Origin: Vitrella brassicaformis CCMP3155
Taxonomy: Eukaryota; Protista; Chromerida
Direction: 5' to 3'
Assembly (NCBI GenBank): GCA_001179505.1
Contig: CDMY01000375.1
Coordinates: 1 to 64,000, forward strand
DNA length: 64,000 bases
Shown here: positions 40,494-46,338 of the stretch, in pieces
Layout: each line of letters opens with the position of its first letter
Position numbering within the stretch: position 1 is the first letter of the stretch
Notes under the pieces: generated by a model
What the model was told of the DNA's origin: nothing
Database searches by the model: none
What the model saw: the letters and a program-made list of their open reading frames with translations, nothing else
Translations under genes and position numbers: made by a program

Positions 40494-40890
40494 CGATCCG
40501 TCAGCGGGGGCTGTGCGTGGCCTTCTCACAGGCACAATCAATTGGTGGCCGGTGGAAGAAGGTCCTTGGATATTGCGAGCTTGGATCGGAAGCGAGCTCG
40601 CAGAGGGGAAAGAGAAAAAGAGGAATAAAATCTGCGTCGTTTGCCTCACACCGCATCGGTTGACGTCCACGCGCGCATAAACGAGTGTAAGAAGGAAATG
40701 ACCGTTGATGCATGTATCTGCGTACACGTGTGTGCGTGCCCGTGTGTGTGTCCGTCAGGCGCAGCGTATCTTTGCTTATCGGCGCTGGCCGCCCCTCATT
40801 TGTCGTACACCGATTGCCTGCCTGCGTGGGTGAGTGCGCCCTGGTTGGTGCGCGTTGCGGTGTGTTGGTGTTGTGTTGACAACCGGCGCG

Positions 40891-43800
40891 ATGTCGAAGA
40901 AGTTGCAGAGTGAGATAGAGCGCGTGTTGCGGGACATCAAGGTGCACGTGGAGCAGTATGACGAGAAGTTTGACGAGCTGCGGCAGTTCAACAGGGAGCG
41001 CTTCATCAACTGCGACAAAATGAAAGACGAAGCCAAGAAGGAGGTGAGGGGTCACCTCACACGTGGCACACACACATACACACACAGACACACGCAAGGG
41101 CATAAGGCAGGCAGGCAGGCTGGCCGGTGGCAGACACAGGGAGGCATAGCGCGACTCGTACAGGCATCGCATTCGTGTGTTGTGTGCATCCCCCCGCTCA
41201 CCATGTGTGTGCAGCAACTTCGCGGCAAGAAGCATGCGATTCGTACGACCACGCTTGAGCTGATGGACGTCAAGCACGTGTTGGACGGCCGTGGCCGCAT
41301 TGAGGGCGAGCTCGAGAATCTGCTGCGGAAGCTGCACCGGCTGGGTCAGCAGGTCAAGGACTGGCTCAACCAAAACGATGTCAGGGACAAAGACTCACTC
41401 GAGCAGTGGAAGAAACAGGTAGGTACCTACATATATCGGCACATACACATACACACGCACATACACACACACACACCCTTCGGCATGTGGATGGAATGTG
41501 TGTGTGTGTCAGCTTGAGGTGCGCTACAAACGTGGCAAGATCTTCTATCGCAGCGGCGAGATCAGCGAGGTCGACATGTCTGGCGAGGGAGAGGTCACCG
41601 AGCACCAGAAGTGGATCGAGGACTACATCAGGAGGCTGGGCGACCAAAACGACCTCTTCGAAGCTGAAATCGAAGCCTCCAAGAAGAAGAAGGTCAGCCA
41701 AACCCAACACGCGCTCAATGCACAAACAGGCTGTGTGTGTGTGTGCAGAGTGCCGATTGTGAGCGTGTGGAGCAGTTGAAGGCCTTCACTGAGCTCCACC
41801 GCAGCCACATGCAGAAGCTGGAAGAACTGCTCAGGCGAATCCGAAACGGAGACCTCAGCTCAGACGTACGCAATCACATCGCCCACACACTCTCGCCCTA
41901 GCCACCGACCCACCTGTGTGTCTGTCTGTCTGTCTGTCTGTCTGGCAGAGCGAGATGGAGAAGTTGGGTGAGTTGCAGGAGGAGCTGCGGGACTATGTCG
42001 AGAATAACGACTCCCTCGACATCGTCGCCATGTGTGACGACCTCTACGCCGACCTCGGCCTCGAGGACATGCCATGCGACATGGACAAGGACGGCTCTGA
42101 CACCGTCGGCGACCCCCTCACCGACGTCGGCACTCACGACGAGCCCATGCGCCTGTCGTCCATCGAGATCGACAACAATGAGGCCGCCTGGGAGGCTGGC
42201 GCTGAGCCCATGGCCGACCACCAGCCCCACCAGCAGCAGCAGCAACATGACGATGAGGGCGACAAGGCCGTCACTACTACTGCTGGCGAGCAGCGTCAGG
42301 CCAAGCGGCCGAAGAAGGGCGGCAAGGGGGCGTCCAAGGACAAGGGCGAGGCCACCAGCAGCACGAGCGCTGTTTCGCCGGCTGCTGTCACGCCCAAGGC
42401 CAGCCTCGCCGCCACTCTCCTGGGCAAGGCCGAGCGAATCGACCACAGAGATAAGGAGGCCAAGAGCGACTTGGACAGCAACGAGTCGCAGCCCTCCCAG
42501 TGGAAGCCCAAGGCGACTCCTGAGCACCCTGTCATCCTGCCCTCGCTCGCCCCAGCAGCGGCACAGCAGCCACCCGGCAGCAAGAGGAAGGGCGACAAGA
42601 CAGACACCCACACCCACACCCACACGCACAGGAAGGCCTCCGGTGACAAGTCGGCCACCAAGCACCCCTCCAGCACCAAGCAGCCCCCCGAGGTCTTCTC
42701 TCCCTCGACCTTCCCTCTGCTCCCATCCGCCACCCCGCGCTCTTTCTCCTCCACACGAGGCGGGGAGGGCTTCGCCTCGTGGGTGTCGGCGGCCAAGCAG
42801 GCGAGCGGGGAGCGGTCTGAGGCGTCGAGCGTCGAGTGTGCCATGTCCAGCACGTCGAGCCTCTCGGGGCCGGGGCAGACAAGCGCGGCCGTTGCTGCCG
42901 CCGCCGCTGCTGCTGCTGCTGGGGGCGGTGGTGCCGAGAAGGTTGGGGGGAGGAGGGGAAGTTTCAATGACACTAAGAGGGCGTCGGACACGGTAAGACG
43001 ACCAGCGAGGAAATAAGCCATGCACCATGAAGCGCGTCATTATTTCCTTGGTCTCCTGTTTGTGGTCAGGTCGGTTCGTCTGTGTCGTCTCAGCAGCACA
43101 TGGCGGTCGATGAGCGCGAGACCCTTGTGTCGATGGGCTTCGCCAGCGATGCCGTCGACCGAGCCCTGATGATGCACGCGGGCAATTTTGACGACGCTCT
43201 CAACCACCTCATCCACACCAACCAGTCGCCCAAGATTCACGAACCACCCACCCCACCACAGTCACAGCCAAGCGCATCAGCGGCTGATGAGCCAGCCCCC
43301 ATGGAGCCGCCCCCACAATCACTGCCCACAGAGCTCGCCGAGGCAGCTGAGTCACCAGATAAGGATGCTGGGGCGCCCAAGGCAGATGGTGACGGTGACG
43401 AGATCATGGAGAGGGAGAGCGAGAGGGCGAGTGAGGAGGAGGTGACGATAGGGGAGGACTGGAAGGCGGTGGGCGAGGGGCAGCTCTCCCTGTCCAAGGG
43501 CACAAGGCTACGCATCCAGGAGCGACACAGCTCCGGATGGACCTTCGGGCAGCTCGTCCGGCCAGACGGCTCTCTCGACGACCGGCCCGACTCGTCTGGC
43601 TGGTTCCCCGACTTCCTCACCCAGCCTCCCCCTCCCCCCTCTCCACCCCGGTTGAACCCACACCCCCACACCCACCCACCCCCACCCACCACAGACAACC
43701 AGAGAGCCGGTGGCCCACCCACTTCCAGCTCGCCCGTGTCCACGGCTGCTGCCGTGCCCATGGTCACGGCATCCTCCCTGCTGCAGCGCGGCCTGGTGCT

Positions 43801-45711
43801 GCAGGAGCGGGTGCACATCCCCAAGGTGCACCCGACGGACGAGGGCCGGTCGGCCGATGGATCGCCGGACGCCTCAGGGTCGGCCGCTGGTGTGAGGGGT
43901 GGGGGAGGAGAGGAGGGATCCGACTCGACCGACCTCGGCTCGGCCACCAGCACCGTCCGTAGCGTGTCGACGCTCACTTTGGGGCGGGGCGGCGGCGAGA
44001 GCGTGGATTTTGATGTGTGGCAGACGGTGAGTATCGAGTCGTCCAACGAGGGAGGAGAGGGCGTCGTGGTTGGGGAGGGCGGCACTGCTGCTGGTGCTGC
44101 TGCCAGTGGAGGTGGAGGTGGTGGTGGTGAAGGGGGTGTGTTGGAGGTGCGTGAGGTGTACTGGGACTGGGCGGGCGAGTACGGCGACACCGCCACGCAA
44201 AACCTGCACTTTTCCAAGGGCGAAAGGGTAAGTCTGTCTGACACACGCACAAGCCACCCACAGTACAGTGGGGGTAGCATTAGTTCTTATGCATGTGCTT
44301 GTGTGCTATCTATCAGGTTGAGATAATCGTTCGGCATCGCTCGGGCTGGACCCACGGCCGCATCGTAGGAGAGCCAGACCGGTGAGTGAGCGGTGACACG
44401 AAATATAACGACGGGTGCGTTGCTCTCACTGCTCCGTCCGCCGATGTGTGTGTGTGTGTGTGTGTGTGTCAGCATCGGTTGGTTCCCCGACTTCATGCTC
44501 ACACCCATTGAGGATGTCGAACGCGAAATGAGAGATAAGAAGGTAACACCAGTGCACACAACAAACAAACAAACAAACACTGCCCCCCATCCCAACACGC
44601 CATCTCTCATCATTTCTTCATTCCCTCAGGGCGACGGTGCGAGTGACGTCGACCACGACGAGGCGCGCAAGGCAGCGTCGCCCCCCAAGCGGCTGTTTTT
44701 CCACCCACCAGACCCCCACCAGCCGACACACCACACAAACCCTCTCGGCCTCGGTCTCGGGGTGGGCGTTGCGCGCCACAATCACACACACGGCCACCGG
44801 CTTTCGTCCTTTACGCTGCCGCGGGGCGTCATGGAGCAGCCACAGGACAGCCCTGAGGGCCAAGGGGGGTCGGGGGGACCCACACCGCCCGGTGAGTAGT
44901 AGGTGGCATGACCGATGCACAGACAGACATGCAGGAGAGAGAGTGCATCCATGCGTTTGTCTTGTCTCGTGGGTGATGTGCAGGGTCGATGTGGTCCCTG
45001 GGCACCCCTCTGCTCACCCCCTTGACGACCAACGCCGGGGCCCTGACGGACAGGAGCCCAGCACCAGCAGCAGCAGGAGCAGGAGGGTCCCGTCTGCAGG
45101 CGCCCCCCTCCGGGACATCTTTGTTCCAGACGCAGCCCAGCCTCATTCGCGGCCATGTGGAGGGGACCGCCGGCCTGACCGCCTCATTGGATGCCGAACG
45201 GCACGACGGCAGCGAGCATCAATGGACACTCAGCCACTCACGGTCCTCTCTCAGGGTAAGCAAGGGAGGGAGGGAGGCGCCATTGCTGCATCTTCCATTC
45301 TTCTGCCCCGTTTGTTTGGTCAGTCTGGCGATGGTCCTGGGAGCGAGCGAGATCTCTCCCACCACCCTTCCCCCGGTGCACTGCGTCCGTCATCCTCGAT
45401 TGCCATGGCGTTTGGGAGCGGCCGGCCTGCGGGCGTCCTCGTCATAAGTGGGAGGGGGGTTTGGTCGGAGCGGACAATGACGTTGCCGGGATGGTCCAGC
45501 GATAAGACCAAGTGAGAATGCGATGAAGGAGTGGATGGCACAATTGGATCGATGGATGCACTCACTGCACGAACACTGGATGGGGTTTCGTGTGCTGTGT
45601 TGTGCTGTGCTGTGTGCTGTCAGTGCGAAGATCCCGGATGAGAACCCGTGGCGCATCTCTGCGGTGAAGGAGCATGAGACGGACACCATGGATGGCACAA
45701 GCAACGCCTGA
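40891..45711 (+). CDS. NOT3/NOT5 N-terminal domain fused to UBA and two SH3 domains; no NOT-box seen
   Basis: MSKKLQSEIERVLR..., KLHRLGQQVKDWLNQNDVRDKDSLE, HRSHMQKLEELLR and LRDYVENND...DDLYADLGLE parallel the CNOT3 N-terminus. A phase-0 intron (42993-43069) joins UBA (LVSMGFASDAVDRALMMHAGNFDDALNHL). SH3-1: LSLSKGTRLRIQERHSSGWTFG...GWFP. SH3-2: LHFSKGER|VEIIVRHRSGWTHG...|GWFPDF. Confidence 0.85.
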
Positions 45712-46338
45712 CGGGGCCGCAATGCCTGCGCGCCTCTGCCTGCCTGCCTGAGACAGACAGTGACGTGACATTTGATGAACACCCCAACCCAATGTTTGCC
45801 GTGCATGCTCATGCATGCCTGTCAGTCAGCTATGCTCCGTCTCAGCCAAGTCAAGTCACGGAGGGGAGGGAGAGATTGAGGAGAAAGGGCTGGGCTGTGT
45901 GTGGCCCTCCCTCCTCTCCCTCCCTCCCTCCCGAGTGGCAGACAGAGACCGACCTGCTGGCTGGCTGTGTGGCTGCATCCATCCATCCATCCATGTGTGT
46001 GTCTGGGTGAGCGAACCGAACGAGGGATTGAGCGGATGTTCACTGGCCTTGTCTTGTGCATGTGGAGTAGGGATGGGATGGCGCGGGTGGGTGGGGGTGA
46101 TTGATAGGTGGACCCAACAATGGCCTGCCTGCCTGCATTTTGACACTGACGTGATGCGCGTGAGGTGAGTGCAGTGCAGTGCACACAGGCGGAGGGAGGG
46201 AGGGAGGGTGAGGGAGTGGAGTGACCTCAAGAGTCATTTAAGGCCCAGACACCCACACATCTCCCTCGCTGGTCATTCATTCACCTACACCTACTGCCCT
46301 GCCACCCATCCCATCCGTCCATCTCGTGATTGATCTAG

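What the first reader, a model, noticed from the sequence alone, without database searches (positions are those of the whole stretch)
40891..45711. NOT3 N-terminal domain fused to UBA and two SH3 domains, lacking the NOT-box
Seen: a phase-consistent spliced model linking NOT3-N, an IDR, UBA, SH3 and SH3, with no NOT2/3/5 box before the stop. Established: Not5/CNOT3 N-domains bind the ribosomal E-site of slow-decoding ribosomes, and the C-terminal NOT-box docks onto CCR4-NOT. Inference: a ribosome sensor uncoupled from deadenylation and rewired to ubiquitin (UBA) and proline-rich partners (SH3), i.e. a possible new translation-surveillance adaptor. I know of no described protein with this architecture, but could not search.
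Basis: partly seen in the sequence, partly recalled or inferred. Interest (0 to 1): 0.78.

Follow-up and report, generated by a model that had tools for sequence, protein, structure and literature searches.

The report
NOT-box-less Not3 protein with UBA, SH3s
A real, expressed gene of the alga Vitrella brassicaformis joins a diverged copy of the ribosome-sensing head of the mRNA-decay subunit Not3/Not5 to a ubiquitin-binding domain and two SH3 domains instead of its usual anchor, and it has undescribed relatives in dinoflagellates that carry a ubiquitin-ligase RING in the same place.

Summary
The 12-exon model (40891-45711, + strand) is phase-consistent. Two spliced transcript contigs support it, including the critical 42992/43070 junction. 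It is identical to the public protein CEM07038.1 / A0A0G4F468 of Vitrella brassicaformis (1266 aa, uncharacterised).

The domains are real:
- Not3 N-domain: Pfam 85 bits, and the predicted fold matches ribosome-bound CNOT3 and Not5.
- UBA and two SH3 domains: confidently folded.
- No NOT box in the protein or anywhere in the 64-kb window.

The architecture is not unique. About 55 protein clusters from dinoflagellates and Syndiniales have Not3-N + RING/zinc finger + two similar SH3 domains, also without a NOT box. I found no paper describing either form.

The "ribosome E-site sensor" reading is weak for the Vitrella protein. Seven of 15 Not5 ribosome/tRNA contact positions, invariant in 29 other N-domains, are changed non-conservatively. 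The tRNA-clamp motif is gone, and the hairpin facing the 40S subunit is about 20 residues per helix longer. The dinoflagellate relatives keep all these contacts.

Most likely this is a lineage-specific ubiquitin/SH3 adaptor built on a remodelled Not5-like head that acts outside the Not1-Not2 module. I could not test whether Vitrella also has a canonical Not3. The scan noted this same stretch once before, in an overlapping window.

The parts
40891..41043 (+). Exon 1, with start ATG at 40891; the transcript contig begins at or before 40759 (5' UTR). Encodes residues 1-51: helix alpha1 and the first half of the hairpin extension.
   Evidence: PF04065 profile 2-49; X6 contig 21
41215..41418 (+). 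Exon 2, residues 52-119: second half of the hairpin extension, helix alpha2, start of alpha3.
   Evidence: (PF04065 profile 39-81, 30 bits)
41513..41692 (+). Exon 3, residues 120-179: end of alpha3, the degenerate tRNA-clamp region (residues 134-143), start of bundle b.
41749..41865 (+). Exon 4, residues 180-218: bundle b.
41949..42992 (+). Exon 5, residues 219-566: end of the Not3 domain (to residue 257, about 42065), then a 300-residue disordered region with a Lys-rich patch and an Ala/Gly repeat (42885-42936).
42993..43069 (+). Intron 5 (77 nt, GT..AG), which holds the in-frame TAA at 43014-43016. This is the junction that decides whether the product is a fusion.
   Evidence: joint 42991->43069 in X6 contig 22 (side 55 nt); unspliced in DNA run X3
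43070..44227 (+). Exon 6, residues 567-952: UBA, SH3-1, a proline-rich motif, a disordered region, and the first part of SH3-2.
43103..43240 (+). UBA domain, residues 578-623 (helices 578-587, 592-601, 606-616; MGF motif).
   Evidence: UBA_7 21-23 bits, below cut-off; TDRD3 UBA, E 5e-4; P0004, P0011, P0022; pLDDT 93-95
43427..43621 (+). SH3-1, residues about 686-750, with an insertion before the GWFPDF motif.
   Evidence: weak; P0002 61% identity, E 4e-22; pLDDT 83-98
43625..43687 (+). Proline-rich segment, residues 752-772 (PPPPPSPPR fits PxxPxR). It could be an internal SH3 ligand; this is inference.
   Evidence: read from the sequence
44144..44506 (+). SH3-2, residues about 925-985, split by introns 6 and 7 (exon 6 end, exon 7 at 44317-44381, exon 8 at 44473-44542).
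   Evidence: SH3_1 29.3 bits against cut-off 22.9; pLDDT 93-95; SH3 folds, TM 0.75-0.85
44630..44891 (+). Exon 9, residues 998-1085: disordered tail.
   Evidence: (joints 44381->44628 with 68 letters between, and 44890->44983)
44984..45255 (+). Exon 10: tail, no family match.
45324..45511 (+). Exon 11: tail, no family match.
45624..45711 (+). Exon 12 coding part, with stop TGA at 45709-45711. The 3' UTR continues beyond 45900 in the transcript contig.

Best explanation
This is a genuine, transcribed Vitrella brassicaformis gene for a 1266-residue scaffold protein.

Its head is a strongly diverged Not3/Not5/CNOT3 N-terminal domain made of two helical bundles. Its body is mostly disordered and carries one UBA domain, two SH3 domains and a PxxPxR-type proline motif. 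It has no NOT box, so it cannot join the Not1-Not2-Not3 module in the known way.

It most likely represents, in chromerids, a myzozoan family that is otherwise seen in dinoflagellates and Syndiniales. In that family a Not5-like head is coupled to a ubiquitin module and a tandem SH3 cassette. The ubiquitin module is a RING E3 (a writer) in dinoflagellates and a UBA (a reader) in Vitrella.

Inferred mechanism: the head docks on a ribosome or ribosome-associated surface, the UBA reads ubiquitin marks, and the SH3 domains recruit proline-motif effectors, all outside the CCR4-NOT core.

In Vitrella the head has been remodelled at the tip that faces the 40S subunit: the tRNA clamp is lost, charges are reversed, and the hairpin is about 30 Å longer. 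The canonical E-site pose of Not5 is therefore unlikely for this protein. Its present target is probably a different surface or partner.
For: Shown:
- Gene model and expression.
- Not3-N homology: Pfam 85 bits; CNOT3 8bhf E 6e-15; Foldseek top hits are CNOT3 and Not5 on ribosomes.
- UBA and SH3 folds.
- No NOT box.
- Relatives: P0005 and about 55 clusters with PF04065 + SH3 (many with RING) and no PF04153, from Polarella, Togula, Azadinium, Dinophysis, Apocalathium, Prorocentrum and Amoebophrya.
- Shared SH3 signature (E)RHxSGWTxG...GWFPD(W/F).
- The tree with P0001 held with that family has a log-likelihood 4.4 higher than the free tree, p-AU 0.61.
- A UBA-SH3-SH3 cassette aligns collinearly with a dinoflagellate LOTUS-UBA-SH3-SH3 protein.
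- Remodelled head: 7 of 15 contact residues changed; a 39-residue insertion that extends helices to 2-52 and 57-102.

Inferred: It rests on the published dependence of Not5 E-site binding on Not4 and eS7 ubiquitination (PMC7615087).
Against: - The N-domain sits on a very long branch (3.8 changes per site). The free tree places it beside a canonical sequence, so shared ancestry with the dinoflagellate family is not shown.
- P0001's SH3-1 is closest to SH3 domains of other Vitrella proteins (P0002 61%, P0003 48%). The SH3 type may be a general myzozoan one, and the architecture could have arisen by independent shuffling.
- No orthologue with UBA-SH3-SH3 was found in 1.84 billion representatives, so conservation of this exact architecture is undocumented.
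- There is no functional data of any kind.
- The UBA is below Pfam's cut-off.
- I did not establish whether a canonical Not3/5 exists in Vitrella.
Confidence: 0.55

Rival explanations
1. [quoted passage not shown]
For: - The overall two-bundle fold is kept.
- K44, K55, K58 and K64 equivalents are kept as R79, K90, R93 and K99, and R4 as K3.
- An alternative register gives R126-G-K128-I-F130-Y-R132, which resembles the K-T-K-x-F-S-K clamp (by eye).
- A UBA next to an E-site binder fits the published need for eS7 ubiquitination.
Against: - Seven contact positions invariant in 29 other N-domains are changed non-conservatively, including a charge reversal at K50 and the whole clamp.
- Net charge of the alpha2-to-clamp stretch is +2 against +5 to +8.
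- In the model the RGKIFYR stretch is helical and the loop after it is acidic and disordered.
- The hairpin that contacts 18S rRNA h23/h24 in Not5 is about 20 residues per helix longer, whereas the Not5 domain is described as precisely spanning the 60S-40S distance.
Confidence: 0.17
2. The Not3-like head has lost any ribosome role and now serves only as a helical oligomerisation or scaffold module. The protein would then be a general ubiquitin/SH3 signalling or endocytic-type adaptor unrelated to translation.
For: - The N-domain diverges sharply: about 92 bits to a family profile where all others score about 300, and a branch length of 3.8.
- Best fold matches of the SH3s include CIN85, beta-PIX, POSH and Sla1-type adaptor SH3 domains.
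- The same SH3 type sits on a kinase and on other Vitrella proteins.
Against: - The entire 230-residue domain, including bundle b and the C-terminal YVENND...LYxDLGLED motif, is retained with an intact frame over five exons. That argues for continued selection on a Not3-like function.
- The same head-plus-SH3 combination recurs in dinoflagellates with fully conserved ribosome contacts.
Confidence: 0.2
3. It is Vitrella's functional Not3/5 subunit and still sits in CCR4-NOT. It would dock by other means, for example its SH3 domains on proline motifs of Not1/Not2, after losing the NOT box.
For: - I could not find a canonical Not3/5 of Vitrella with the searches available. Those searches were insensitive or truncated.
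Against: - Perkinsus has canonical PF04065+PF04153 proteins.
- A canonical one (P0110) comes from a transcript whose 5' end shows the last six letters of the dinozoan spliced leader (weak). This suggests the SH3 family is an extra paralogue rather than a replacement.
- The NOT box is the only known interface of Not3/5 with Not1/Not2 (established knowledge).
Confidence: 0.06
4. Annotation artefact: two neighbouring genes (Not3-N ending at TAA 43014; UBA-SH3 starting at ATG 43100) wrongly fused.
For: - The distance from the stop to the next in-frame ATG is short.
- The two transcript contigs of X6 do not overlap in laid sequence across the repeat at 42885-42936.
Against: - Contig 22 joins 55 nt of exon 5 to exon 6 exactly at GT..AG and removes the TAA. 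The DNA run of the same organism does not show this joint.
- The gap between the contigs lies inside one uninterrupted exon, at a low-complexity repeat where assemblers break.
- The public annotation reached the same model independently.
Confidence: 0.02

Closest known systems
Not3/Not5/CNOT3, subunit of the NOT module of CCR4-NOT (yeast Not5 in PDB 6TB3 and 8K82; human CNOT3 in 8BHF and 9C3H)
   Same: Homologous N-terminal domain over its full length (PF04065 profile 2-231). Same two three-helix bundles, same terminal YVExN...LYxDLxLE motif, followed by a long disordered linker.
   Different: - No C-terminal NOT box, so no known way to bind Not2/Not1.
- The tRNA-clamp motif and four further invariant ribosome/tRNA contacts are lost.
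- The alpha1-alpha2 hairpin is lengthened by a 39-residue insertion.
- A UBA and two SH3 domains are added.
Undescribed dinoflagellate/Syndiniales family Not3-N + RING + zinc finger + SH3 + SH3 (e.g. P0005, P0045 of Apocalathium hangoei, P0096 of Amoebophrya sp. A120; 750-980 aa)
   Same: Not3-type head, no NOT box, a ubiquitin-system module in the middle, and two C-terminal SH3 domains with the same (E)RHxSGWTxG...GWFPD(W/F) signature, the first carrying a loop insertion. A common clade is not rejected (p-AU 0.61).
   Different: - Those proteins keep every Not5 ribosome/tRNA contact and the canonical helix lengths.
- They have a conserved C3HC4 RING plus a further Cys/His finger where Vitrella has a UBA.
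- They end right after SH3-2, whereas Vitrella has a 280-residue tail.
- Vitrella's N-domain lies on a very long branch.
Dinoflagellate LOTUS(OST-HTH)-UBA-SH3-SH3 proteins (P0011 cluster, 20 members; transcript carries the dinoflagellate spliced leader)
   Same: The UBA-SH3-SH3 cassette aligns collinearly with residues 583-777 of the Vitrella protein (E 7e-7 against 1.84 billion proteins), with the same SH3 signature. The cassette is again attached to an RNA-biology head domain.
   Different: The head is a LOTUS domain, not Not3-N, and the linkers are much shorter.
Not4/CNOT4, the RING E3 that ubiquitinates eS7 and is needed for Not5 E-site binding
   Same: A functional analogy only: a ubiquitin-system module works beside a Not5-type head.
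   Different: No sequence relationship. Not4 is a separate polypeptide with a C4C4 RING, an RRM and a zinc finger. Vitrella has a ubiquitin reader, not a ligase.
UBASH3A/B (STS/TULA) and CIN85/Sla1-type SH3 adaptors
   Same: They combine UBA and/or SH3 domains in ubiquitin-linked adaptor roles. Their SH3 folds are among the best structural matches.
   Different: No phosphatase (PGM) domain and no Not3 head in those proteins. There is no evidence of common descent beyond the domains themselves.

Membership tests
Not3/Not5/CNOT3 (canonical CCR4-NOT subunit) | N-terminal Not3 domain (PF04065) with two helical bundles | tested here: met
   85.4 bits, E 5e-24, profile 2-231. CNOT3 8bhf E 6e-15. AF2 pLDDT 86, and Foldseek top hits are CNOT3/Not5.
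Not3/Not5/CNOT3 (canonical CCR4-NOT subunit) | C-terminal NOT box (PF04153) that pairs with Not2 and docks on Not1 | tested here: not met
   No Pfam hit in any exon or in the full protein. A custom NOT-box HMM gave nothing in P0001 or in six frames of the window (best E = 2); the control scored 215 bits.
Not3/Not5/CNOT3 (canonical CCR4-NOT subunit) | Conserved E-site contacts: basic alpha2 surface and tRNA-clamp motif K-T-K-x-[FY]-S | tested here: not met
   K50E, Q57H, R60G, K101E, K103S, F105V and S106D, at positions invariant in 29 other N-domains. Net charge +2 against about +6. The clamp loop is acidic with pLDDT below 50.
Not3/Not5/CNOT3 (canonical CCR4-NOT subunit) | Physical presence in the Not1 complex or on ribosomes | not testable with these tools
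   Needs IP-MS or polysome profiling.
Myzozoan NOT-box-less Not3-N/SH3 family (undescribed; defined here) | Not3-N head, no NOT box, and two C-terminal SH3 domains with the RHxSGWTxG...GWFPD(W/F) signature | tested here: met
Myzozoan NOT-box-less Not3-N/SH3 family (undescribed; defined here) | Central C3HC4 RING plus a Cys/His finger (invariant C346...C403, C439...C467 of P0005) | tested here: not met
   None of these Cys/His residues occurs in P0001. hhalign aligns only the N-domain. A UBA sits in that region instead.
Myzozoan NOT-box-less Not3-N/SH3 family (undescribed; defined here) | N-domain falls inside or beside the family's clade | tested here: inconclusive
   The family forms one clade (SH-aLRT 100). 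The free tree puts P0001 outside it on a 3.8-long branch. The constrained tree has a log-likelihood 4.4 higher, p-AU 0.61.
UBA domain | Three-helix bundle with an MGF loop and the conserved second hydrophobic patch | tested here: met
   Sequence 'LVSMGFASDAVDRALMMHAGNFDDALNHL'. Three helices with pLDDT 93-95. TDRD3 UBA E 5e-4. Pfam is below the cut-off at 21-23 bits against 27. Ubiquitin binding was not tested.
SH3 domain | Five-strand barrel with the conserved Trp and the Pro-x-aromatic 3-10 turn | tested here: met
   SH3-2: SH3_1 29.3 bits against cut-off 22.9. Both domains are modelled at pLDDT 83-98. Foldseek gives SH3 domains with TM 0.75-0.85 and rmsd 2-3 Å. Ligand binding was not tested.

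The most novel reading that the evidence does not exclude
Myzozoan algae may possess a stand-alone ribosome-surveillance family that works without the CCR4-NOT scaffold.

In this reading a Not5-type E-site probe is fused directly to a ubiquitin module and a tandem SH3 recruitment cassette. The module is a RING ligase that writes the mark in dinoflagellates and Syndiniales, and a UBA that reads it in Vitrella. The dinoflagellate proteins would be single-chain equivalents of Not5 plus Not4. The Vitrella gene in this window would be the diverged chromerid member that reads ubiquitinated ribosomes.
Probability: 0.25. Interest if true: 0.8.

Novelty: new variant of a known kind. Interest (0 to 1): 0.55.

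Why it matters
The Not5/CNOT3 N-domain is the only known protein probe of the empty ribosomal E site. It links slow decoding to mRNA decay, and so far it has been seen only as part of CCR4-NOT.

A family in which this head is detached from the NOT box would show that the probe can be redeployed as a module. Here it is attached instead to ubiquitin writers or readers and to SH3 domains.

The family would also supply natural separation-of-function variants:
- The dinoflagellate proteins keep all the ribosome and tRNA contacts.
- The Vitrella protein has lost the clamp.

Dinoflagellates rely heavily on post-transcriptional control, so an E-site-coupled E3 ligase there would be a concrete, testable regulator.

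For genome annotation, A0A0G4F468 and its relatives can be renamed from "uncharacterised/UBA domain-containing" to Not3-N-domain proteins without a NOT box.

Tried and rejected
- Word-index search with exon 6 found nothing, because the length window excludes the 1266-aa protein.
- Word-index search with the N-domain of P0001 found only itself. Local phmmer later gave 50-67 bits to many Not3 proteins, so that blank reflects candidate selection, not absence.
- ESM Atlas feature search gave no usable hit.
- Supplement tables of PMC5862402 list Not3/Not5 homologues for many eukaryotes but not for Vitrella or Chromera.
- The identities of P0110 and P0126, the closest canonical N-domains, were checked in case they were Vitrella's canonical Not3. 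They come from Tara and other metatranscriptomes.
- The dinoflagellate spliced leader was searched for in the fetched transcripts. It is clear for P0011, only six letters long for P0110, and absent at the ends of the P0005 contigs.
- hhalign of the dinoflagellate family against P0001 aligned only the N-domain, so a cryptic RING in Vitrella is rejected.
- One-to-one correspondence of SH3-1 and SH3-2 between Vitrella and the family is not supported. Both Vitrella SH3s score better against the family's SH3-2.
- The many short-sided 'joints' in DNA runs around 42244/45058 are CAG/GCA low-complexity cross-matches, not rearrangements.
The identical database protein P0001 was used instead.

Full report
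**What is there.** The window is nuclear DNA of the chromerid alga Vitrella brassicaformis.

On the + strand, 40891-45711 holds a 12-exon gene. The exons are 40891-41043, 41215-41418, 41513-41692, 41749-41865, 41949-42992, 43070-44227, 44317-44381, 44473-44542, 44630-44891, 44984-45255, 45324-45511 and 45624-45711. All introns are GT..AG and the phases are consistent. The CDS is 3801 nt, giving 1266 aa.

**Is the fusion real?** The decisive intron is 42993-43069, which contains an in-frame TAA at 43014-43016.

I laid public runs on 40700-45900. Run X6 carries only spliced contigs, and it comes from the same organism as the unspliced DNA run X3.
- Contig 21 joins exons 1 to 5 and runs to 42884.
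- Contig 22 joins 55 nt of the end of exon 5 to exon 6 exactly at the predicted junction (skips 77, GT..AG). It then follows every downstream junction into the 3' UTR.
- Runs X1 and X2 show three of the 3' junctions as well.

The two X6 contigs break only at the GCT/GGC repeat at 42885-42936, inside the uninterrupted exon 5. That is typical of short-read assembly.

Independently, a search of 1.84 billion representative proteins with exon 6 returned P0001 (1266 aa). Every exon translation is found in P0001 in order and without change. P0001 is CEM07038.1 / UniProt A0A0G4F468, named only 'unnamed protein product / UBA domain-containing protein'.

All full-length analyses used the identical database protein.

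**Domains.**
- Not3 N-domain. Exons 1-4 each hit Pfam Not3 (PF04065) collinearly. The full protein scores 85.4 bits over the whole profile. Against solved structures, the N-terminal 273 residues match human CNOT3 (8BHF, E 6e-15) and yeast Not5.
- N-domain fold. An AlphaFold2 model built on a 30-sequence alignment (pLDDT 86) gives two helical bundles. Its best Foldseek matches are the ribosome-bound CNOT3 and Not5 chains.
- UBA and SH3 domains. A second model, of residues 575-1000, shows three confident modules in otherwise disordered sequence:
  - a three-helix UBA at 578-616 (pLDDT 93-95, with the MGF motif);
  - SH3-1 at 689-749;
  - SH3-2 at 942-985.
- Fold matches for that model are SH3 domains at TM 0.75-0.85.
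- Sequence support. SH3-2 passes Pfam's cut-off, and UBA is just below it. The UBA is also supported by the TDRD3 UBA hit and by library hits to multi-UBA proteins.
- NOT box. There is none: no Pfam hit. A profile I built from 50 canonical C-termini finds nothing in the protein or in six frames of the 64-kb window, while a left-out control scores 215 bits.

**It is not alone.**
- The first relative. The exon-6 search also hit P0005 (812 aa). Pfam shows this to be Not3-N + RING + two SH3 domains with no NOT box.
- Size and range of the family. A search with P0005 found about 55 clusters of 750-980 aa with PF04065 plus SH3 domains. Many also have a RING, and none has PF04153. They come from transcriptomes and genomes of Polarella, Togula, Azadinium, Dinophysis, Apocalathium, Prorocentrum and the syndinian Amoebophrya.
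- Canonical forms. Canonical PF04065+PF04153 proteins appear lower in the same list, for example from Perkinsus.
- Conserved features. An alignment of 40 family members shows an invariant C3HC4 RING, a further Cys/His finger, and two SH3 domains with the signature ERHxSGWTYG...GWFPDW. Both Vitrella SH3 domains share that signature.
- A shared cassette. The Vitrella UBA-SH3-SH3 stretch aligns collinearly with a LOTUS-UBA-SH3-SH3 protein family (P0011). Its transcript begins with the 3' end of the dinoflagellate spliced leader. The tandem SH3 cassette, with or without UBA, is therefore a module attached to different RNA-biology heads in these lineages.

**Is Vitrella's protein a member of the dinoflagellate family?** In a tree of 109 N-domains, the SH3 family forms one clade (SH-aLRT 100). 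P0001 sits on a very long branch (3.8 changes per site), which the free search placed beside a canonical sequence. A tree constrained to hold P0001 with the SH3 family is 4.4 log-likelihood units better, and it is not rejected (p-AU 0.61). Common origin is therefore compatible with the data but not shown.

Two results argue against simple orthology:
- The RING/finger is absent.
- SH3-1 is most similar to SH3 domains of other Vitrella proteins (61% to P0002).

**Does the head still look like an E-site probe?**
- The contact list. The contact residues of yeast Not5 are given in bioRxiv 10.1101/854810. They are R4, Q8, S40, H41, K44, K50, K55, Q57, K58, R60, K64, K101 and the tRNA-clamp motif K103-L110. 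I checked the numbering against the PDB chain alignments.
- What the other N-domains keep. In an alignment of P0001 with 14 family and 15 canonical N-domains, K50, Q57, K58/R, R60, K101, K103, F/Y105 and S106 are invariant in all 29 others.
- What P0001 has at those positions: E85, H92, R93, G95, E135, S137, V139 and D140. The net charge of that stretch is +2 instead of about +6.
- The insertion. P0001 also carries a 39-residue insertion between alpha1 and alpha2. The model builds it as a continuation of both helices, to 2-52 and 57-102, against 3-32 and 39-70 in Not5.
- Why the insertion matters. In Not5 that hairpin tip touches 18S rRNA, and the domain is said to span the 60S-40S distance precisely. 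My inference is that the canonical pose is unlikely for the Vitrella protein.
- An alternative register would recover a clamp-like RGKIFYR, but the model makes that stretch helical.
- The dinoflagellate family keeps all the contacts and the canonical helix lengths.

**Interpretation.**
Detachment from the Not1/Not2 module is well founded. E-site sensing is doubtful for this protein but plausible for its dinoflagellate relatives.
- My best reading (confidence 0.55) is a lineage-specific ubiquitin/SH3 adaptor with a remodelled Not5-like head. It is probably the chromerid counterpart of a myzozoan family that couples this head to a ubiquitin module, RING in dinoflagellates and UBA in Vitrella.
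- Published work shows that Not5 binding needs Not4 and eS7 ubiquitination (PMC7615087). That makes a writer/reader pairing attractive, but it remains inference.

**Literature.** Four full-text searches and a 2025 review of CCR4-NOT diversity gave no description of either architecture.

**Limits.**
- I could not test whether Vitrella has a canonical Not3/5.
- No orthologue with the exact Vitrella architecture was found.
- There is no functional evidence.

Noticed in passing
window 41044-41214: Intron 1 is 171 nt, in frame and free of stops, so retaining it would add 57 residues. The X6 transcript contig shows it spliced out.
   Followed up: partly
window 40984-41043 and 41215-41292: The 39-residue insertion that lengthens the alpha1-alpha2 hairpin straddles intron 1. 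The end of exon 1 and the middle of exon 2 both match Pfam Not3 profile positions about 39-49, which hints at a small internal duplication.
   Followed up: no
P0011 / locus L005:1-2234: A dinoflagellate protein family has LOTUS (OST-HTH) + UBA + SH3 + SH3. Its transcript starts with TTTGGCTCAAG, the 3' end of the dinoflagellate spliced leader. It carries the same C-terminal cassette as the Vitrella gene, on a different RNA-related head.
   Followed up: partly
P0002 (CEM31319.1), P0003 (CEM22573.1), P0164 (CEM39768.1) of Vitrella: Other Vitrella proteins carry the same unusual SH3 type (RHSSGWT.G...GWFPD). They include a protein kinase with a C-terminal SH3, and a 740-aa protein whose SH3 is 61% identical to SH3-1, including its loop insertion. 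This points to recent domain shuffling within Vitrella.
   Followed up: no
loci L002 and L007 (same JGI sample 3300018833): A canonical Not3 with a NOT box (P0110) and a RING/SH3-family member (P0005) occur in the same marine metatranscriptome. The P0110 transcript begins with CTCAAG, the last six letters of the dinozoan spliced leader. This is weak evidence that dinozoans keep a canonical Not3 beside the SH3 family.
   Followed up: partly
window 42216-42250, 42605-42631, 45058-45085: Many short-sided (about 20 nt) 'joints' and loose ends in all runs fall at CAG/GCA and CAC repeats. They look like low-complexity cross-matches between unrelated contigs, not rearrangements.
   Followed up: no
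runs X1 and X2: Two runs labelled with other organism codes (A and B) hold error-free spliced contigs of this Vitrella gene. They may be relabelled strains, co-cultures or cross-contamination.
   Followed up: no
window introns, e.g. 41062-41133, 41435-41510, 44450-44472: The introns are rich in (AC)n/(GT)n microsatellites.
   Followed up: no
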